Under the pieces are notes generated by a model. That model ran no database searches. It was not told the origin of the DNA and was given only the letters and a program-made list of their open reading frames with translations. Of a DNA stretch of 64,000 bases, positions 30,827-63,925 are shown one piece after another. The translations under genes and the position numbers were made by a program. The DNA lies in the IMG/VR virus record IMGVR_UViG_3300045973_000169, positions 1-64,000 of that record, one strand, 5' to 3'. How positions within the stretch are numbered: position 1 is the stretch's first letter; each line of letters starts with the position of its first letter.

Positions 30827-30911
30827 GGGGTTGTAGCGGATCGGCCTTCTAAGCCGTGCACATAACACCGTAATGGATCGCATGCTGGTTCGAATCCAGT
30901 CAGCCCCTCCA
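30827..30911 (+). tRNA. Atypical D-armless tRNA-Arg(TCT)-like RNA
   Basis: GGGGTTG/CAGCCCC acceptor stem, CGGC-CTTCTAA-GCCG anticodon arm, GCTGG-TTCGAAT-CCAGT T arm, CCA. No D arm; long variable region. Confidence 0.7.
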
Positions 30912-31253
30912 TTATTCATTTGAATGTAAAATTGAATGACAATTAGCACATAGTAAAATGCATTTATCTAGTTCTTCGTTTATTGAACTTTGTGATCTTA
31001 AACGCAGCTTACCCCAATCAAAATCTTTTTGAGAAGGGTTTGTATGATGGAATTGCATTGCAGCATAGTGATATTCATTATTACAATGATTACATTTAGA
31101 TCCAAGATAAATAATTGCATCTTTTTTACGTTGGATCCATCGCTCAATGCAGTAAGCATTAAAACAAGTTTTACAATAAGTTTGTAACTTAGTGCCTTTA
31201 GTATAGAATTCTGATTTATTTTTTTCTGTGTTACATTTTGAGCATGTTTTCAT
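30912..31253 (-). CDS. HNH endonuclease inserted in the tRNA cluster (opposite strand)
   Basis: CSKC...CKTC, LGSKCNHC, FHH...KDF, ELDKCILLCANCH; AAGGAGA SD. Confidence 0.88.
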   Translation of the reverse strand: MKTCSKCNTEKNKSEFYTKGTKLQTYCKTCFNAYCIERWIQRKKDAIIYLGSKCNHCNNEYHYAAMQFHHTNPSQKDFDWGKLRLRSQSSINEELDKCILLCANCHSILHSNE

Positions 31254-34487: not shown

Positions 34488-35117
34488 ATGGCAAGAGAAA
34501 TTACAGTTTGTGAGGCGCTAAAAGAGTTGAAGACTCTTGATGCACGTATCAATAAAACAACCAAAGATGCACTGTTTATCACTGTTTCTGTTGGTGGTAA
34601 GTTGCCTGTTGGACAGAAGTCTGAAACTGACTTCGAGACCAAAGCTAAAGGTTCCTTGCAGTCGATCAGAGATCTGATTGCACAACGCAATGAGATTAAA
34701 GCTTCTATCGTTGCTTCTAATGCAGTTACCAATGTTACTGTTGGTAATATTCAGTACACTGTTGCTGGTGTTATTGAGCGTAAGAAGTCAATTGAATACG
34801 AAAAGGAGCTTGTAAAGGCTTTTGGTCTTCAGTTGCTTAAGGCATTACGTGAAATCGAGAATACTAATGCGAGAGCATCACAGGTTCTTGATGGCCATAT
34901 CTCTACTATCCTTGGTAAGGATGCCAAAGAAAAGGGCGGTAAAGAAGTTGATGACTTCACTGCTCAGTTCATGGCAAGGAATGAAGCAAAGGTTGTTGAT
35001 CCGATCAATGTGAAAGAGGAACTTGATAAACTGGATGCTTCAGTTAGAGAGTTCGAAGCAAATGTTGATACAGCTTTATCTATCAGCAATGCTACAACAA
35101 AGATCACTGTGAAATAA
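34488..35117 (+). CDS. Coiled-coil protein, DIP1984/septicolysin-like pattern
   Basis: 'EALKELKTLDARI', 'I..SNA.T.V', C-terminal 'VD.ALS.SNATT.I'. Confidence 0.55.
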   Translation: MAREITVCEALKELKTLDARINKTTKDALFITVSVGGKLPVGQKSETDFETKAKGSLQSIRDLIAQRNEIKASIVASNAVTNVTVGNIQYTVAGVIERKKSIEYEKELVKAFGLQLLKALREIENTNARASQVLDGHISTILGKDAKEKGGKEVDDFTAQFMARNEAKVVDPINVKEELDKLDASVREFEANVDTALSISNATTKITVK

Positions 35118-35123
35118 TAGTTC

Positions 35124-35463
35124 TATCCTTGGCTATACGAAAACGATTAATAAAGATACCTTCTCATAATAGGTTAATTATGAACTTCGACTTGATATCG
35201 GATCATAATTTTGACTGTCTAATACACATGATAAATTATATTTAAGCGCGTAGCGCTCATCTAAAAGCTCAGGTACATCAGGAGTTAGGTTACAAGAATC
35301 ATTTAAACTGCGTAGAAGCCTTTCGTGGGTGGAGCGGGATTCAAGTCTTTTTAGTTCAAGATATAAGACTTATGTTTACATGATTCGATAAAACCCATGA
35401 ATTATTTTATAAGCATTTATCTTTTAAGCTTTTCGTTTGTACATGGCTGTATAGCCAGGGATA
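35124..35463 (+). ncRNA. Putative ~340-nt structured RNA
   Basis: Closing 15-bp helix TATCCTTGGCTATAC/GTATAGCCAGGGATA (one G-U), inner helix GAAAA..TTAATAAAGATA/TATCTTTTAA..TTTTC; ORF-free. Confidence 0.7.
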
Positions 35464-35476
35464 TAATATAAATTTA

Positions 35477-35554
35477 AGACTAGTTTCTGCAAACCACACA
35501 AACATGAGAAGCCCTGAACTGGGCAAAGTGGGGTAGAGGGAGAGAACTAGTCTG
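35477..35554 (+). ncRNA. Stem-C(A/T)GCAA element 1 (in the 5' leader of the DUF2828 gene)
   Basis: TAAG-start, AGACTAGTT/AACTAGTCT stem, CTGCAA, A/C-rich linker, ends CTG. Confidence 0.65.
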
Positions 35555-35600
35555 TTAAAATCAATCTTCCTCTACCTCACCCAAATTAAAGGAGAGAAAA

Positions 35601-36977
35601 ATGGCTGCAAAATATACATTAACAGAAAATGGGGCTAAGACCCTATCCGATAGTGGCAATCCTTTAGTGAATTTGTTTTTTACTATTGGGTCTGCTCGTA
35701 ATAACCCTGAAGTAACAAGAGCTAACTTTAAGAAAGCTTTTGAGTTTGATGCATTGAGAGCTTCTGCTATAGTTCTTTGTGCTCGTGATATTCGTCATAA
35801 TGGTATGGGCGAACGTCAGATCTTTCGTACGCTTCTTAAAGACATGGCTGGTAGTGGTAAGATCTATACTCAGAAGATAGTTGAGCTTATCCCTGAGATT
35901 GGCCGTTTTGATGACCTCAAAGCAGTTGAAGGTACTGTTTATGAGAAGATGGCTATTGATATCTTTGCTAAGGCTATCCGTGAGCGTAATGTTCTTGCTG
36001 CTAAATGGGCAAAGCGTGAAGATAAGAAACTTCAGTTAGCTTTAGGGCTGAATGAAGCTGGACTCCGTAAGCTCTTAGCATCAATTCGCAAAGAGCATAT
36101 CGTTGAGGCCAAGATGTGTCTTAAGGACTGGAAATCTATCGAGTATGGTAAAATTCCTTCAGTTGCTGGTACACGTTATTCAAAAGCATTTCATAAGAAT
36201 GATGGTATTCGTTATCGTGCTTTCATTGATAACCCTGATACTAAGGTGAATGCATCTGCTTCTTTCCCTTATGATGTATATCGTATGTGGAGTAGCAGAA
36301 CTTGTCAGCCTCCTGAGATTAACAAGTATTGGAATAATCTGAAAGAGCTTGAGCTTTCAGGTAGTGTCCTTGCTATTGTTGATACATCAGATTCTATGAC
36401 TTGGTTTAAGGTTGCTGGTAGCCTTGTTCCAAGGGATATTGCTGTATCATTGGGCGTCTACTGTGCTCAGAAGATTGAGGGTAAGTTCAAGAATAATATG
36501 ATGACCTTCAATTCTAACCCTGAGTTCTTTACATTGCCTACAGGTGATGTATGTCAGGCATTTGATAAGGTAATGAGATCCAATATTGGTGGCAGTACTA
36601 ACATTCAGAAAGCTTATGAGAAGATTCTTTCCATGGCTCAGACTGTTAATGCTACTGATAAGGATATGCCTAAGTTCATCCTTATTATATCTGATATGCA
36701 GTTTAATGGCTGCACAGATAGACCTTCTGATACTGTCTATGACAATATGAGAAAGAAATATAAGGCTGCTGGATTCACTATGCCTAAAGTGATATTCTGG
36801 AATATGGATGCTCGTCATGATCAGTATCCTACTGCTTCATTTCAGAAAGAAACTGCTTTAATTAGTGGTTTTAGTCCTAATATTCTCAAGGCAGTTCTTA
36901 AGGGGCAAGATGTTGTTATCACCCCTGAAGGAATAATGAATGAGGCAATTGCTCCATTCATTGAGATGTTAAAATAG
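35601..36977 (+). CDS. DUF2828-family helical + vWA (MIDAS) protein, Ro60/TROVE-like by inference
   Basis: TENGA, RDIR..G.GER..FR, G..DDL, LAAKW..RE, MIDAS DTSDS, ISDMQF, VIFWN, SGFSP. Confidence 0.8.
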   Translation: MAAKYTLTENGAKTLSDSGNPLVNLFFTIGSARNNPEVTRANFKKAFEFDALRASAIVLCARDIRHNGMGERQIFRTLLKDMAGSGKIYTQKIVELIPEIGRFDDLKAVEGTVYEKMAIDIFAKAIRERNVLAAKWAKREDKKLQLALGLNEAGLRKLLASIRKEHIVEAKMCLKDWKSIEYGKIPSVAGTRYSKAFHKNDGIRYRAFIDNPDTKVNASASFPYDVYRMWSSRTCQPPEINKYWNNLKELELSGSVLAIVDTSDSMTWFKVAGSLVPRDIAVSLGVYCAQKIEGKFKNNMMTFNSNPEFFTLPTGDVCQAFDKVMRSNIGGSTNIQKAYEKILSMAQTVNATDKDMPKFILIISDMQFNGCTDRPSDTVYDNMRKKYKAAGFTMPKVIFWNMDARHDQYPTASFQKETALISGFSPNILKAVLKGQDVVITPEGIMNEAIAPFIEMLK

Positions 36978-60679: not shown

Positions 60680-61231
60680 ATGAGACTAAGAACATTAGTT
60701 ATGGTTGTGTTATTTTTGGTAATTAGTATATCGCAGTTAGCATTTAGTGATTATCATCCTACGTTTAGTAAGTATAGCACAGAGGCGTATCAATTAGCTA
60801 GTAAGATTGATACATTAAAAGAAAAGTATCATTTAAAACATAAGAGTTATGAAGACTTATTGGAAACATGTAGTTACATAACAACATATTCACAGTATAG
60901 TAAGTTTGATAAGTATGAAGTTTCAGCTATTGTATTAAAAGAGGCTAAGTTTGACCAATTTGCTTTTAACAAAAATGATGGTGGGATAGGGCTAGGTCAG
61001 ATAACAGGTTTAAAAAAAGGTTGGCATGATGATACTTTATTCTGGATGACAGATCCTTGGAATAAAGAACAGAATATTAGAGGAATCTATTTCTTATTAT
61101 CTGACAATTTACACTGTTATAAAACTAAGTTTAATGCTATCAAAAGGTACAATGGTAAGACAGTAAAGAGTAAAAGATATGCAGAGCATATTGGAAAACT
61201 TAAACAAGAAATAAAAGCAGCAAAAATTTAA
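60680..61231 (+). CDS. Secreted lytic transglycosylase (SLT-like)
   Basis: Signal peptide; AI..KEAKF...A, GLGQI, NI.G, RYNG motifs. Confidence 0.65.
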   Translation: MRLRTLVMVVLFLVISISQLAFSDYHPTFSKYSTEAYQLASKIDTLKEKYHLKHKSYEDLLETCSYITTYSQYSKFDKYEVSAIVLKEAKFDQFAFNKNDGGIGLGQITGLKKGWHDDTLFWMTDPWNKEQNIRGIYFLLSDNLHCYKTKFNAIKRYNGKTVKSKRYAEHIGKLKQEIKAAKI

Positions 61232-61765
61232 AATCCTTTCCTAGGCCCCATCCTGTAACACTATCCCTCAAAAATAGTGTTATGGTTTGGGGTCTAAATA
61301 ATTTTTGGAGAAACAAATGTTAAACTTAGATAAAAAGAATTTCTATAATGCAGGTTTAAATAAACAATATACAAAGGTTTATAAAGTTGTAACTGTAATT
61401 AAAGATGTAATGCTTAGTATGAATGCTCAAAGAGAAAATTATGGTACTATAATCCCTTCTGTAATGAAAATAAAGTATGAGTATGGTAAAGTATCATATC
61501 CTAAAGTTGGTAAATTGTTCTGTTTCCCTGATTATCAATCAGCAAAAAAATGGTGTGATAAAATGACTGATGGAATAATTATAGTAGGGAAAGGAACTAA
61601 TGTTGAAGAATGTGAGATCTCATATCTTTTAGGAGAAAGAGGATTCAGGCATGTTGAAAGATTTTGGAGTACAAAGAATAAATCAACTATCTCTGAAGCT
61701 ATTTGGCACGTCCCTACAAAAACTTATACTTGTGATTCTTTCACTCCACTTAGGAGAGTAATAGG

Positions 61766-62194
61766 ATGCTAATAGATCAAATCAGAGCAGATAGAATTGT
61801 TGCATTTAAAAACAAAGAAAATATCAAGAAAAACTTACTAGGCTGTCTAATTGGGGATGCCTGTAAGATTGATAAAGAGCCTACTGATGCTTTTGTACTA
61901 TCTATTATTAAGAAGTTTATTGATGGTGCTAAGATTGTAATTGAAAATGCTAAAGATACTGATTATGAGTTCTATCAAGCTAACCAGGAGATTGATATTC
62001 TCGAAACTTATCGTCCTAAACAATTGACTGAAGATGATATTAGGGGTAAAATTTATAGGCTTATAACTGCTGGGTCTATTGAACAGCCTAACCTTCTTAA
62101 TCTTGGTGATATTATGAAATATTTTAAAACTAATTTTGAAGGTCAATATGATGGTGCATTAGTATCTAAATTAGCTAAAAAGATGCTAGTATGA
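61766..62194 (+). CDS. GatB/YqeY domain protein
   Basis: I..D...AFK, E..ILE.Y.PKQL.E, G.IMK......G.YDG..VS. Confidence 0.8.
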   Translation: MLIDQIRADRIVAFKNKENIKKNLLGCLIGDACKIDKEPTDAFVLSIIKKFIDGAKIVIENAKDTDYEFYQANQEIDILETYRPKQLTEDDIRGKIYRLITAGSIEQPNLLNLGDIMKYFKTNFEGQYDGALVSKLAKKMLV

Positions 62195-63160
62195 TTTATA
62201 TAATTGTATGGAATATAGTTCTAACATGTGCTGTTGGAGTACTTCTATATAAGGAACTTACACGAAAAAGTATTGAGGTAGAGTAATATGTATCCACCAG
62301 ATTATAATACTGGTGATGATGATATGGCTCCAGATGATAGAGGTAAAGTAGGAATGGGTGAATTTGCTGATATGGCTATTGATTCTATTATCAATGGCCC
62401 TTATGGTATGTGGTCTCCTAGTTATAATTCGAGATATAATTCAAGCTATAGTAGACCTAAAAAGAGAATTTCATGTAATAAGTGTAATTCTACTATGGTT
62501 TATTGGGAACAACTTTCTAGTGGAAGATGGTGCCTATATGATAGTGTTACTGATAAACCACATGTATGTCGTAAAGGTGATAATAAGAAAGATATAATTA
62601 AACATAGACAAATTTACAGTTGTTTTAATTGTATCTATATTAATCATAAAGATAAGAGTTGTGATGAACATAACTTTATAACTACTTATGATTCTATATG
62701 TAATGATTATGAAAGTAGTATATGACTGATGGTAAATTTTTTAATCCTTTCTCTATCAAACTTATGCTAATAATAGGGATTGTTTTAACTGTATGTTGGC
62801 TAGCAGAAAGTGAACCTAAGAAGAAAGATCCACAACAGACTATTGTAATAAAAAATTATATATATCCTAAAGATATTGTATACAAAAATGTGAGTACAAA
62901 ATGAAAAATGCTTTTGAAATATATAGTGATGCAGAGAAACTTGAAGAACAACTTAAACCATTTCAATACTTTATGGCTGGATGTGGGATAACTGGTTTTG
63001 CGAGTGCTTTTTTAGCAATAATATGGTCTCCATTTGTTTATGGGGTATTTGGTTTGTTTTTAGCTGGTATTATTGCTGGGTTTCTTGTCCAATACGAAAA
63101 TAAAATTGGGCGATGGAAAAGAGAAGCTATTAGACTCTATGGTAGAGATGAAGAGGAGTA

Positions 63161-63925
63161 TTGGTAATGCTTGATCTTACTGATAAAAGATCCTTTTATA
63201 ATATATATCCTATTAAGAAGGCTAATGGTAAGATTAGGATTATACATGCTCCTAAAAAAGAACTTAAAGATGAACAGAAAAAGCTTGCAGATGCATTAGA
63301 AAAATGGTATAATCCTCCTGATTGTGTATTCGGTTTTATCAAAGGTAAATCTCCTAAAGACTTAGCTCAACATCATATTAATAAAGATTGGATTGTTACT
63401 CTCGATATTAAAGATTTCTTTCCAAGTATAACTAAAGCTCTGTTAAAAGAGTTATTAAGATTAGATGACTATTGGATAGAAGTTGCAACTTATGAAGATA
63501 AACTTATACAAGGTAGTCCAGCGAGTCCTATATTAAGTAATCTTGTAATGCTATGGCAGGATAAGTTCTTTGAAATGTATGCTTTTGTAAATGGGTATAC
63601 TTATAGTAGATATGCAGATGATTTAGTGTTATCAGGGATGGGTAAGCCTAAATGGGATTATATCAATTATATAGAGAGCCATTTAAATGGATTAGGTTTT
63701 AGATTGAATAAATCTAAGATTAAATTTATGTTTAAGAATCAAGAGCAAAGAGTTCTTGGTATTACAGTAAATGATAAGGTTAGTCTAAACCATAAAGTTA
63801 GAAAGAAGCTTAAAAATACGATTAAATATAATCCTATGAGCAATGTATTACAAGGCTATATGGCTTATGTTAATAGTATCAATAAAGATCAATTTAATAA
63901 AATAAAAGAACAAACAAAAGGGTAA
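63161..63925 (+). CDS. Retron-like reverse transcriptase (compact, 254 aa)
   Basis: IKK.NG..R.I.AP...LK..Q, GF.KGKS, LAQHH (NAxxH-like), LDIKDFFPSI, QGSPASP.LSN, YSRYADDL, LN..K, VLG (VTG-like). Confidence 0.88.
   Translation: MVMLDLTDKRSFYNIYPIKKANGKIRIIHAPKKELKDEQKKLADALEKWYNPPDCVFGFIKGKSPKDLAQHHINKDWIVTLDIKDFFPSITKALLKELLRLDDYWIEVATYEDKLIQGSPASPILSNLVMLWQDKFFEMYAFVNGYTYSRYADDLVLSGMGKPKWDYINYIESHLNGLGFRLNKSKIKFMFKNQEQRVLGITVNDKVSLNHKVRKKLKNTIKYNPMSNVLQGYMAYVNSINKDQFNKIKEQTKG

What the first reader, a model, noticed from the sequence alone, without database searches (positions are those of the whole stretch)
34488..35463. Coiled-coil (DIP1984-like) gene immediately followed by a ~340-nt closed structured RNA
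Seen: a few nt after the stop codon a 15-bp helix opens (35124-35138) and closes at 35449-35463. It encloses a second long helix and ORF-free sequence, with junction motifs CGAAAA on the 5' side and CATGGCTG on the 3' side. Inference: a protein-ncRNA pair not matching any RNA family I recognise, such as a filament- or cage-forming protein with its RNA, or a type III TA-like pair. The terminal inverted repeat followed by G (35139) also resembles a retron a1/a2 arm, so it could serve in trans as template for the orphan RT at 63 kb (weak).
Basis: partly seen in the sequence, partly recalled or inferred. Interest (0 to 1): 0.75.

Follow-up and report, generated by a model that had tools for sequence, protein, structure and literature searches.

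The report
New phage RNA paired with protein
The gap after this phage gene encodes a real, heavily knotted RNA of about 340 bases that almost always travels with that one protein gene in big phages and Bacillus-type bacteria. It matches no described RNA family, so it looks like an unrecognised RNA-protein module whose function is still unknown.

Summary
A closing helix (35124-35139 / 35448-35463) starts 6 nt after the stop codon and bounds an ORF-free stretch. On its own the helix is within chance; comparison with relatives makes it real.

- **Conservation:** homologues of the 209-aa protein (30-66% identity) carry the same RNA just downstream, same strand. A model built without the window hits 67 of 80 viral loci and 78 of 80 bacterial loci. 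It hits the window once (E 1e-8).
- **Structure:** the closing helix, two inner helices and a 5-bp pseudoknot all covary. The middle is variable and often holds AAG triplets every 7 nt.
- **Expression:** metatranscriptome contigs of a close relative cover only 35130-35462.
- **Known families:** Rfam 15 gives nothing.
- **Context:** the downstream DUF2828 gene and the retron-type RT at 63 kb are not general partners. tRNA genes follow the RNA, always on the same strand, in 45 of 106 loci.

Best reading: a new structured RNA co-transcribed with a DIP1984-like helical protein and acting with it as an RNP. The function is not established.

The parts
34488..35117 (+). Gene for the 209-aa helical (coiled-coil plus small beta-sheet) protein. 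It is the invariable upstream partner of the RNA.
   Evidence: ORF. phrog_1491, 1e-58, carries a 'tail fiber' label for which I found no support; no Pfam family. AF2 pLDDT 89. Best PDB match is 3kdq, a C. diphtheriae protein of unknown function; AFDB gives a 'septicolysin' cluster. Family median pI is 5.6.
35124..35463 (+). The whole structured RNA, about 340 nt, from the first to the last base of the closing helix.
   Evidence: nhmmer and alignments to relatives. Model R1 hit. RNA-library contigs of a close relative cover 35130-35462 only. G-U pairs fit the + strand only.
35124..35139 (+). P1, 5' arm of the closing helix. The conserved junction G AAAAC follows at 35139-35144.
   Evidence: Family-wide: arms of 12-21 bp with quite different sequences, 94-99% canonical, 5-6 pair types per pair.
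35448..35463 (+). P1, 3' arm. It is preceded by the conserved GGC and starts with U-G.
35141..35146 (+). P2, 5' strand (AAACGA). It pairs with 35433-35438 (TCGTTT).
   Evidence: Compensatory with L009 (AAACAAC/GTTGTTT). Cognate 5'/3' windows pair better than non-cognate ones (mean 6.4 vs 4.0), with 0 of 1000 permutations reaching the observed value.
35152..35158 (+). P3, 5' strand (AAAGATA). It pairs with 35418-35424 (TATCTTT), which lies in the loop of a small hairpin (35411-35414 / 35428-35431).
   Evidence: Double compensatory change versus L009 (AAAAGTA/TACTTTT). Cognate vs non-cognate 6.0 vs 5.1, with 0 of 1000 permutations. Three covarying columns.
35158..35182 (+). 5' H-type pseudoknot: ACCT 35158-35161 with AGGT 35171-35174, and CATAAT 35165-35170 with ATTATG 35177-35182.
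   Evidence: Read from the 5'-segment alignment. Both stems change in a compensatory way, for example L094 CACCU/AGGUG with GAGGG/CCCUC and L135 ACGU/ACGU with CUUAAU/AUUAAG. No statistical test was run.
35183..35383 (+). Variable central region. It holds hairpins and a degenerate array of A-R-G triplets at 7-nt steps (35280, 35287, 35294), plus the stem 35343-35349 / 35365-35371.
   Evidence: Enrichment of 7- and 14-nt spacing in the family. Chains of 5 or more triplets at exact 7-nt steps occur in 18 of 80 bacterial RNAs, against 0 of 800 shuffles; the window has a chain of 3. In L106 and L063 this region holds a tRNA-like domain instead.
35384..35399 (+). Conserved motif TTCGATAAAAC (family consensus UCGAUAAAAUCC), running into the 5' strand of the 3' pseudoknot (35395-35399, CCATG).
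   Evidence: Most frequent 7-mers of the family. Alignment A4.
35442..35446 (+). 3' strand of the pseudoknot (CATGG). It pairs with 35395-35399 and lies between the P2 3' strand and the P1 3' arm, so it crosses P2 and P3.
   Evidence: RNAalifold on 39 sequences that exclude the window. Five pairs; the first four are never broken, and two of them have 20 and 27 sequences changed on both sides.
35356..35457 (+). Match of covariance model R1 (3' domain). R1 was built from 39 relatives without the window or its close kin.
   Evidence: 52.6 bits, E 1.3e-8; the only significant match in the window and in the whole 206,638-bp genome.
35469..35590 (+). NOT part of the RNA. This is a structured leader of the downstream DUF2828/DUF7788 gene (35601-36977).
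   Evidence: It aligns to the region upstream of the DUF2828 homologue P0002 in L005/L006 (74% over 127 nt, E 8.5e-14), not to loci of the 209-aa protein.

Best explanation
The stretch 35124-35463 is a gene for a stable, highly structured non-coding RNA of a family not found in Rfam 15 or in the literature I searched. It forms a fixed two-part module with the helical protein gene just upstream.

Shown:
- The RNA is conserved downstream of that gene, on the same strand, across phages and bacteria.
- Its 5' and 3' ends are locked together by a closing helix (P1) stacked on two further long-range helices (P2, P3).
- A 5-bp pseudoknot crosses P2 and P3, and an H-type pseudoknot sits in the 5' part.
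- The middle is variable and often built of A-R-G triplets every 7 nt.
- RNA of a close relative with exactly these boundaries is found in a metatranscriptome, while the flanking genes are not.

Inferred:
- The RNA is co-transcribed with the protein gene. Only 6 nt separate the stop codon and P1 here. In Bacillus safensis one intrinsic terminator follows the RNA.
- The RNA is trimmed to the P1 boundaries. Where tRNA genes follow within 3-18 nt, tRNA processing probably does part of this.
- The knotted core protects the RNA from exonucleases.
- The RNA then acts together with the co-encoded protein as an RNP. My proposed mechanism is that oligomers of the coiled-coil protein bind the periodic triplet array, much as HutP or TRAP read spaced triplets. 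The conserved core would serve as the folding and nucleation platform.

The cellular role is unknown. It probably concerns RNA or tRNA metabolism or phage-host conflict, given the tRNA-array context and the patchy, mobile distribution.
For: - **Protein to RNA:** R1 matches at E <= 0.01 in 67 of 80 viral loci and 78 of 80 bacterial loci of protein homologues. All matches are on the gene's strand, and the viral ones lie about 170-900 nt past the gene end. The median ORF-free gap after the gene is 362 nt.
- **RNA to protein:** in a protein-blind pattern scan, every locus with the G-AAAA junction also had the protein gene upstream (20 loci with the protein in all). The other 60 hits lacked both, as expected by chance.
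- **Neighbours differ:** DUF2828 in the window; UDG and RT in L009; an HNH gene in L010; tRNAs or housekeeping genes elsewhere.
- **Covariation:**
- **Strand:** G-U pairs fit the + strand only.
- **Expression:**
- **Periodic triplets:**
- **Not a known family:**
- **tRNA context:** 45 of 106 loci have a downstream tRNA within the flank, all on the same strand; 29 lie within 150 nt.
Against: - No direct evidence that the protein binds the RNA.
- The protein family is mildly acidic (median pI 5.6) and has no recognisable RNA-binding domain.
- The 7-nt array is strong only in part of the family. About half of the phage RNAs have no exact 7-nt pair, and the window has only a chain of 3.
- Strict synteny could also come from co-transcription alone.
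- The RNA-library support is a few low-depth contigs from a relative, in a library that may contain DNA.
- The T5-like copy is recognisable by architecture only. R1 gives 14 bits, E 0.11 there.
Confidence: 0.55

Rival explanations
1. A purely cis-acting 3' UTR element. The knotted structure blocks 3'-5' exonucleases or otherwise tunes the stability or translation of the upstream mRNA, and has no trans function and no protein binding.
For: - It is always immediately 3' of the same gene and on the same strand.
- In B. safensis it lies between the stop codon and the terminator.
- The protein has no RNA-binding hallmark.
Against: - 260-440 nt with at least five covarying helices and two pseudoknots is far more than known 3' stabilisers need.
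- RNA contigs cover the RNA but not the mRNA body.
- Tandem second copies exist (L299).
- Conservation holds over roughly 30% protein identity.
Confidence: 0.15
2. A selfish or conflict module: addiction, defence or anti-defence. The RNA neutralises or regulates the protein, as in a type III toxin-antitoxin pair, or the pair acts as a decoy for a host or phage nuclease.
For: - The distribution is patchy and mobile: lytic phages, jumbo phages, and single cassettes among housekeeping genes in Bacillales, Clostridia, Deinococcus and a Bathyarchaeia MAG.
- The RNA has a fast-evolving repeat array.
- In phages it sits in the accessory region next to tRNAs.
Against: - No PADLOC match.
- The protein fold is a helical bundle, not a nuclease.
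- The RNA is downstream rather than upstream of the gene, and its repeats are 7 nt, not about 36 nt.
- About 441 T5-like genomes keep it at 88% nucleotide identity or more. It also turned up in many Lysinibacillus species. That looks like a useful function rather than pure addiction.
Confidence: 0.15
3. A tRNA-directed RNA that works on its own: an RNase P-like ribozyme, a processing platform, or a tRNA mimic serving the adjacent tRNA array.
For: - It heads same-strand tRNA arrays in many loci.
- The pseudoknot crosses P2 with the same strand order as P4 crosses P2 in RNase P. Its A-rich 5' flank (AAAAUCC...GGCU) recalls the P4 strands AAAGUCC...GGCUU (the comparison is from memory).
- tRNA-like domains are embedded in L106 and L063.
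Against: - No RNase P, tmRNA or tRNA model matches the RNA, even at E 10 or 0.1. ARAGORN finds no tmRNA.
- The base equivalent to the conserved P4 G is A, opposite C.
- More than half of the loci have no tRNA nearby, and the two bacterial chromosomal loci examined have none.
- It does not explain the obligatory protein partner.
Confidence: 0.08
4. A Y-RNA-like partner of the downstream Ro/TROVE-like vWA protein (DUF2828/DUF7788, 35601-36977).
For: - In the window the RNA lies between the two genes.
- phrog_850 is labelled 'RNA-binding protein'.
- Rsr operons place Y RNAs directly 3' of a protein gene (from memory; one search lists PMC4201824).
Against: - The RNA tracks the upstream gene in every other context.
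- 0 of 5 other RNA-bearing phage records encode DUF7788, and the positive control in the window's own genome worked.
- Close DUF2828 homologues share only the 35469-35590 leader.
- No Y RNA model matches.
Confidence: 0.03
5. A retron-type msr-msd template used in trans by the retron-like RT at 63161-63925.
For: - The terminal inverted repeat is followed by G.
- The RT is retron-type (PADLOC RT_III-A, 6e-54).
- Its orthologue lies 1.0 kb downstream of the RNA in L009.
Against: - 4 of 5 other RNA-bearing phage records lack any RVT_1.
- The two bacterial loci examined have no RT within 2.5 kb.
- The RT travels with its own UDG block.
- The RNA is far larger and more knotted than retron ncRNAs.
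Confidence: 0.02

Closest known systems
Ro60 (Rsr) with Y RNA (YrlA) modules of bacteria and phages
   Same: A protein gene is directly followed by its structured ncRNA. The RNA is closed by pairing of its 5' and 3' ends. Some members carry a tRNA-like domain in the RNA (L106, L063). The distribution is sporadic, in bacteria and large phages, near RNA-repair and tRNA genes.
   Different: The protein is a helical bundle, not a TROVE ring. No Y RNA model matches. The RNA is 2-3 times longer and has several pseudoknots and a 7-nt repeat array. The Ro-like DUF2828 gene next door is not the conserved partner.
RNase P RNA (catalytic core P1-P2-P4)
   Same: A closing P1 helix, an inner P2, and a short pseudoknot helix whose 3' strand lies between the P2 3' strand and the P1 3' strand. 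An A-rich stretch lies 5' of the pseudoknot. The RNA is often adjacent to tRNA genes.
   Different: No match to any Rfam RNase P model. The conserved regions CR-I to CR-V are absent. There is no RnpA-like protein. The central heptad array has no counterpart.
ROOL and GOLLD (large ornate RNAs of phages and prophages, often next to tRNA genes)
   Same: A large, complex, pseudoknotted RNA of unknown function in phage genomes, next to tRNA genes.
   Different: No sequence or structure match (Rfam). It is smaller. ROOL and GOLLD have no obligatory protein-gene partner, whereas this RNA is essentially never seen without its protein gene.
Periodic-triplet RNA targets of oligomeric Bacillus RNA-binding proteins (HutP: NAG-N4 repeats; TRAP: GAG/UAG repeats). 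From memory, not tested.
   Same: A-R-G triplets recur at a fixed spacing of 7 nt (triplet plus 4 nt), in runs of up to 6 at exact steps in the test and about 12 heptads by eye in B. safensis.
   Different: Those are short cis-regulatory leader sites. Here the array sits inside a closed, stable RNA, and the co-encoded protein is unrelated to HutP or TRAP.
Type III toxin-antitoxin systems (ToxIN, CptIN)
   Same: A protein gene plus a repetitive structured RNA forms a two-part, horizontally mobile cassette found in bacteria and phages.
   Different: The RNA is downstream, not upstream. The repeats are 7 nt, not 34-36 nt. The protein is not a ToxN-type endoribonuclease. The conserved pseudoknotted core is unlike ToxI.
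Retron msr-msd RNA
   Same: A terminal inverted repeat followed by a G, and a retron-type RT in the same genome.
   Different: There is no adjacency to, or co-occurrence with, an RT across the family. The conserved partner is a non-RT protein.

Membership tests
Retron ncRNA (msr-msd) | Encoded next to, and co-occurring with, a retron RT | tested here: not met
   The RT lies 28 kb away in the window. 4 of 5 other RNA-bearing phage records have no RVT_1. The two bacterial loci examined have none within 2.5 kb.
Retron ncRNA (msr-msd) | a1/a2 terminal inverted repeat with a priming G at its inner end | tested here: inconclusive
   An inverted repeat followed by a conserved G is present. However, that G pairs with a conserved U as part of P1, and the same feature occurs in genomes without an RT.
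Retron ncRNA (msr-msd) | Produces msDNA | not testable with these tools
   Needs co-expression and a nucleic-acid gel.
Y RNA / YrlA | Partner is a Ro60/TROVE-type protein encoded alongside | tested here: not met
   The conserved neighbour is the upstream helical protein. DUF7788 is absent from 5 of 5 other RNA-bearing records, and the control was positive.
Y RNA / YrlA | Match to Rfam Y RNA models, or a tRNA-like module on a Ro-binding stem | tested here: not met
   No Rfam match at E <= 10. A tRNA-like insert occurs only in L106 and L063.
RNase P RNA | Match to bacterial, archaeal or type-T covariance models and the conserved regions CR-I to CR-V | tested here: not met
   No match in the window at E <= 10, or in 19 relatives at E <= 0.1.
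RNase P RNA | P4 pseudoknot crossing P2, next to P1 | tested here: inconclusive
   A helix with the same topology exists. The flanking consensus differs, with A opposite C where P4 has G-C.
RNase P RNA | Cleaves pre-tRNA 5' leaders | not testable with these tools
   Needs an in vitro assay.
tmRNA | tRNA-like acceptor and T-arm with a tag reading frame | tested here: not met
   ARAGORN finds no tmRNA in the window. No Rfam tmRNA match.
Type III toxin-antitoxin (ToxIN-like) | Tandem 34-36-nt RNA repeats upstream of a ToxN-fold endoribonuclease gene | tested here: not met
   The RNA is downstream and the repeat period is 7 nt. The protein is a helical bundle. No PADLOC match.
ROOL / GOLLD / other catalogued large RNAs | Match to the Rfam model | tested here: not met
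DIP1984 / septicolysin / DUF6847-like proteins (the protein partner) | Profile match to the family | tested here: not met
   No Pfam or NCBIfam family reaches threshold.
DIP1984 / septicolysin / DUF6847-like proteins (the protein partner) | Same fold | tested here: inconclusive
   Foldseek against 3kdq: E 0.04, TM 0.48/0.63. AFDB 'septicolysin' cluster: E 0.02. Atlas cluster with DUF6847: TM 0.57/0.68.
The RNA family defined here (model R1 plus P1/P2/P3 architecture) | 3'-domain model match, closing helix with G-AAAA and GGC-UG junctions, location 3' of a phrog_1491 gene | tested here: met
   Window: R1 gives 52.6 bits, E 1.3e-8 at 35356-35457. Junctions and helices at the stated coordinates. 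The gene is phrog_1491, 1e-58.

The most novel reading that the evidence does not exclude
This is a new class of large, multiply pseudoknotted bacterial and phage ncRNA with its own dedicated helical protein. The two form an RNP particle or filament nucleated on a 7-nt triplet array. The module is shared by T5-like phages, jumbo phages and Bacillales chromosomes, and acts on tRNA or RNA metabolism or in phage-host conflict. It would be an RNP class comparable in standing to Ro-Y RNA, but unrelated to it.
Probability: 0.45. Interest if true: 0.85.

Novelty: categorically new. Interest (0 to 1): 0.8.

Why it matters
- **New large RNA classes are rare.** Those found before (RNase P, tmRNA, OLE, ROOL, GOLLD) each opened a field.
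- **It is widespread.** The protein is in 743 deposited phage genomes, and a probable, divergent copy sits in about 440 T5-like phages. It is also in many Bacillus, Lysinibacillus, Brevibacillus and Clostridia genomes.
- **It has been missed by annotation.** The RNA is unannotated and the partner protein is mislabelled 'tail fiber protein'.
- **It is testable.** The module occurs in tractable systems, namely BASEL T5-like phages on E. coli K-12 and the Bacillus pumilus group.
- **Immediate annotation gains.** The result corrects a misleading PHROG label. It explains a recurrent 300-450-nt 'empty' gap in phage genomes. It also shows that the DUF2828 gene and the retron-type RT in this window are separate matters.

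Tried and rejected
1. **DNA-level search in deposited phages:** blastn of the region found nothing. The exact 18-mer CATAATAGGTTAATTATG found nothing in viral contigs. Single-protein locus searches also failed, so an alignment query was needed.
2. **Y-RNA idea:** this was prompted by the Ro-like DUF2828 neighbour. I rejected it because the RNA follows the upstream gene in all other contexts and DUF7788 is absent from other carriers.
3. **RNase P idea:** the topology is similar, but there is no model match and the consensus differs. It is kept only as a low-probability rival.
4. **'AAAGYUCA' as a single P4 strand:** rejected. It is a repeated heptamer.
5. **T-loop mimicry by the heptamers:** only a minority of heptamers read GUUC, so I dropped this.
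6. **Rad, the T5 anti-retron protein:** it is a different protein, 189 aa with a TOPRIM domain.
7. **A third conserved neighbour gene:** none was found among 86 upstream neighbours.
8. **Circular RNA:** suggested by a permuted joint in a metatranscriptome contig. Tandem RNA gene copies occur (L299) and explain it more simply, so this stays open.
9. **Whole-RNA consensus folding of four sequences** was spoiled by misalignment of L011. I used anchored 5' and 3' segments instead.
10. **My pseudoknot window extraction** was faulty (only 24 sequences). The pseudoknot evidence rests.
11. **Literature searches** for T5 ncRNAs, DIP1984/septicolysin, DUF6847 and phage structured-RNA catalogues found no description of this RNA. 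An unnamed entry in the 10,006-motif catalogue (PMC10690425) cannot be excluded.
Full report
**1. Setting**

The window is the first 64 kb of a 206,638-bp IMG/VR virus record rated 100% complete, that is, a jumbo phage. A pond DNA run holds 99% of the sampled words from this stretch and is probably the source sample. The neighbourhood is a typical accessory region. It has small ORFs, two HNH endonuclease genes, tRNA genes, a ferritin gene and a DUF2828/DUF7788 vWA gene.

**2. Checking the observation**

- The 209-aa ORF 34488-35117 ends in TAA at 35115-35117.
- From 35124, 16 bases pair with 35448-35463: 14 Watson-Crick pairs and 2 G-U pairs.
- Nothing of 40 aa or more is open on either strand in 35118-35600.
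- By itself this is weak. A 64-kb AT-rich sequence gives about five such helices by chance, and the window has eleven. The single-sequence fold has z = -2.6.

**3. Relatives**

Deposited phage genomes share no DNA similarity with the region. The protein, however, has homologues in 743 phage records and in metagenomes.

- **First signal.** The short contig L008 follows a 66%-identical homologue. It aligns to window 35125-35396 in conserved blocks.
- **Close homologues.** Each has an ORF-free gap of 280-380 nt after the gene, whatever gene comes next. Their sequences show compensatory changes in the closing helix and in two inner helices.
- **A separate module.** Window 35469-35590 instead aligns to the region upstream of DUF2828 homologues. 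The intergenic gap therefore holds two independent elements.
- **160 more distant loci (30-45% protein identity).**
  - The ORF-free gap after the gene has a median of 362 nt.
  - In 106 of 155 loci, a blind search for the best long-range helix found arms of 12-21 bp of quite different sequence.
  - In those loci the 5' arm ends in ..CG followed by AAAA(Y), and the 3' arm is preceded by ..GGC and begins UG.

**4. Structure**

In 68 non-redundant sequences the six innermost P1 pairs are 94-99% canonical, with five or six pair types each.

- **P2 and P3.** These were tested by asking whether a sequence's own 5' and 3' windows pair better than windows from different sequences.
  - P2: mean 6.4 against 4.0.
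  - P3: mean 6.0 against 5.1.
  - In both cases none of 1000 permutations reached the observed value.
- **The 3' pseudoknot.** The family motif UCGAUAAAAUCC runs into a 5-bp helix. Its partner strand lies between the 3' strands of P2 and P1. In 39 sequences that exclude the window, the first four pairs are never broken. Two of them have 20 and 27 sequences changed on both sides. This helix crosses P2 and P3.
- **Nested features.** The 3' strand of P3 sits in the loop of a small covarying hairpin. A compact H-type pseudoknot follows P3 on the 5' side. Both were read from the alignment and were not tested statistically.
- **Strand.** G-U pairs are tolerated throughout on the + strand. On the other strand they would be A-C mismatches, so the RNA is read in the direction of the gene.
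- **Variable middle.** It holds hairpins and, in many members, tandem heptamers of consensus A-A-A-G-N-U-Y.
  - Successive AAG triplets lie 7 nt apart in 12.8% of cases, against 2.2% in shuffles. They lie 14 nt apart in 8.2%, against 1.8%.
  - Chains of five or more A-R-G triplets at exact 7-nt steps occur in 18 of 80 bacterial copies and in 0 of 800 shuffles.
  - The window has a chain of three.
- **tRNA-like inserts.** In L106 and L063 the middle holds a tRNA-like domain.

**5. An independent model**

A covariance model of the 3' domain (R1) was built from 39 relatives, without the window or its close kin.

| Searched | Result |
|---|---|
| Window and whole own genome | one significant match, 35356-35457, 52.6 bits, E 1.3e-8 |
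| 80 viral loci of protein homologues | 67 matched, all on the gene's strand and downstream |
| 80 bacterial loci of protein homologues | 78 matched, all on the gene's strand and downstream |
| T5-like locus L173 | 14 bits, E 0.11, not significant |

- **Reverse test.** I scanned viral contigs for the RNA motif alone. Sixty of the 80 loci listed lacked both the junction motif and the protein, consistent with my estimate of about 200 chance matches. Every locus with the G-AAAA junction also had the protein gene just upstream.
- **No third partner.** No gene is conserved among 86 upstream neighbours.
- **T5-like phages.** They have the gene, a 443-nt unannotated gap, an 18-bp closing helix, the ACGAAAG junction and a CCUAGA/UCUAGG...GGCUG pseudoknot. 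Some 441 records keep this stretch at 88% identity or more. Because R1 does not reach significance there, I call the T5-like RNA a probable, divergent member.

**6. Expression**

- **Metatranscriptome contigs.** A sediment metatranscriptome holds contigs of a close relative. They map only to 35130-35462 and not to either flanking gene. One 151-nt contig differs by 3 letters and 2 gaps. Depth is low and the tool warns that DNA may be present. Even so, the coincidence with the P1 boundaries is striking.
- **A permuted joint.** One contig joins the 3' arm to the 5' arm through about 9 nt. Tandem RNA copies exist in a Parabacteroides MAG (L299) and explain this more simply than a circular RNA would.
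- **Terminators.** In B. safensis the RNA is followed at once by an intrinsic terminator. In the window no terminator follows.
- **tRNA genes.** In many phage loci tRNA genes follow within 3-18 nt. Of 106 loci, 45 have a downstream tRNA in the flank, all on the same strand.

**7. What it is not**

| Candidate | Result |
|---|---|
| Any Rfam 15 family (RNase P, tmRNA, Y RNA, ROOL, GOLLD) | no match in the window at E <= 10, in 19 relatives at E <= 0.1, or in 12 bacterial loci at gathering score |
| Partner of DUF2828/DUF7788 | 0 of 5 other carriers encode it; positive control worked |
| Retron RNA for the RT at 63 kb | RT is retron-type, but only 1 of 5 other carriers has any RT, and it is far from the RNA |
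| Known defence protein | no PADLOC match for the partner protein |
| Rad (T5 anti-retron protein) | a different protein |

The RT's orthologue in L009 sits in its own UDG block.

**8. The protein**

- AlphaFold gives a confident model (pLDDT 89). Long helices pack as a coiled coil, and a small sheet forms from the N-terminus, a central hairpin and the C-terminus.
- The best solved match is 3kdq, a Corynebacterium diphtheriae protein of unknown function (probability 1.0, but E 0.04 and TM 0.48/0.63).
- AFDB and the Atlas add 'septicolysin' and DUF6847-like clusters. All viral look-alikes are uncharacterised.
- The family is mildly acidic.
- I found no support for the PHROG label 'tail fiber protein'. 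The gene never lay among virion genes in the loci I examined.

**9. Distribution**

- Besides lytic and jumbo phages of Proteobacteria and Firmicutes, the module sits in bacterial genomes. Carriers include Lysinibacillus (many species), the Bacillus pumilus and B. licheniformis groups, Brevibacillus, Psychrobacillus, Paenibacillus, several Clostridia and Deinococcus.
- It also appears in MAGs labelled Parabacteroides and Bathyarchaeia.
- In Lysinibacillus sp. RS11 and B. safensis FO-36b its neighbours are transporters, a homocysteine methyltransferase, a subtilase and an RNA methyltransferase. These are not phage genes.

**10. Interpretation**

Shown: a conserved, knotted RNA gene is obligatorily coupled to one protein gene, probably co-transcribed with it, and probably accumulates as a discrete RNA.

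Inferred: the two products act together.

I commit to an RNP in which the oligomerising coiled-coil protein reads the periodic A-R-G array, while the pseudoknotted core closes and protects the RNA. Confidence is about 0.55 for the RNP and lower for the array-binding detail. The biological role is open. The tRNA-array context and the patchy, mobile distribution point to RNA or tRNA metabolism or to conflict systems.

Rivals are a purely cis 3' UTR element, a toxin-antitoxin-like or decoy module, and an RNase P-like or tRNA-directed RNA. The Y-RNA and retron readings are largely excluded.

**11. Novelty**

No catalogued RNA family, defence family or protein family accounts for the pair, and I found no description in the searchable literature. 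An anonymous entry in a large motif catalogue cannot be ruled out. I therefore rate it as a new class. The caveat is that 'new' here rests on failed membership tests and on searches of open literature only.

Noticed in passing
window 63161-63925 (+), with 60680-63167 upstream: A 254-aa retron-type reverse transcriptase in a phage (Pfam RVT_1 1e-21; PADLOC RT_III-A 6e-54). It is shorter than usual retron RTs. A 49%-identical orthologue in L009 (4989-5741) sits in the same block: small ORF, UDG, small ORF, RT, then a Gad2-like gene. No ncRNA for it was identified.
   Followed up: partly
window 35469-35590 (+): A structured leader upstream of the DUF2828/DUF7788 vWA gene (35601-36977, phrog_850 'RNA-binding protein'). 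It is conserved with L005 3857-3983 and L006, and has nested inverted repeats (35528-35543 / 35565-35580). It may be a cis-regulator or a small RNA of that Ro-like protein.
   Followed up: partly
window 30827-30908 (+): Rfam calls a tRNA (33 bits, just above the gathering score) with a 23-nt insertion. ARAGORN does not call it. It abuts an HNH endonuclease gene on the opposite strand (30912-31253).
   Followed up: no
L106 2194-2257; L063 2213-2287: A tRNA-like domain (Rfam tRNA 48.8 bits, model positions 5-66; ARAGORN 'tRNA-???') lies inside the variable centre of the RNA in two relatives.
   Followed up: partly
L299 3130-3780 (Parabacteroides MAG): Two tandem, divergent copies of the RNA follow a single protein gene, separated by a short hairpin.
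   Followed up: yes
window 35462 joined to 35130 in RNA run X2: A metatranscriptome contig of a relative joins the 3' arm of P1 to the 5' arm through about 9 nt (depth 2). It could be tandem gene copies, a circular RNA or a template switch.
   Followed up: partly
L053 2490-2551: A twister-P1 ribozyme-like match (41 bits, below the gathering score of 67) lies directly after the RNA's 3' end.
   Followed up: no
L301 3516-3644 (Paenibacillus xylaniclasticus): A skipping-rope RNA (RF02924, 54 bits, above the gathering score) lies about 85 nt after the RNA.
   Followed up: no
L321 3385-3415 (Bacillus safensis FO-36b); L356 (Lysinibacillus sp. RS11): In bacterial chromosomes the protein-RNA cassette sits among housekeeping genes. 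In B. safensis it ends in an intrinsic terminator, so it looks like a self-contained operon.
   Followed up: partly
L173 4082-4399 and other T5-like records: In T5-like phages the gene after the RNA gap is annotated in some records as a 'cyclic-phosphate processing receiver domain' protein. This is another RNA/NAD-conflict-associated neighbour, alongside DUF2828 in the window.
   Followed up: no
L005 6139-9371: A relative phage carries a TerF-like vWA gene, two TerD genes and a PRTase gene just downstream of its DUF2828 gene.
   Followed up: no
phrog_1491 annotation in RefSeq phage records: The partner protein is widely labelled 'tail fiber protein' (once 'major capsid protein'). I found no support for either label. 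The gene lies in early or accessory regions, and its fold is a DIP1984-like helical bundle.
   Followed up: partly
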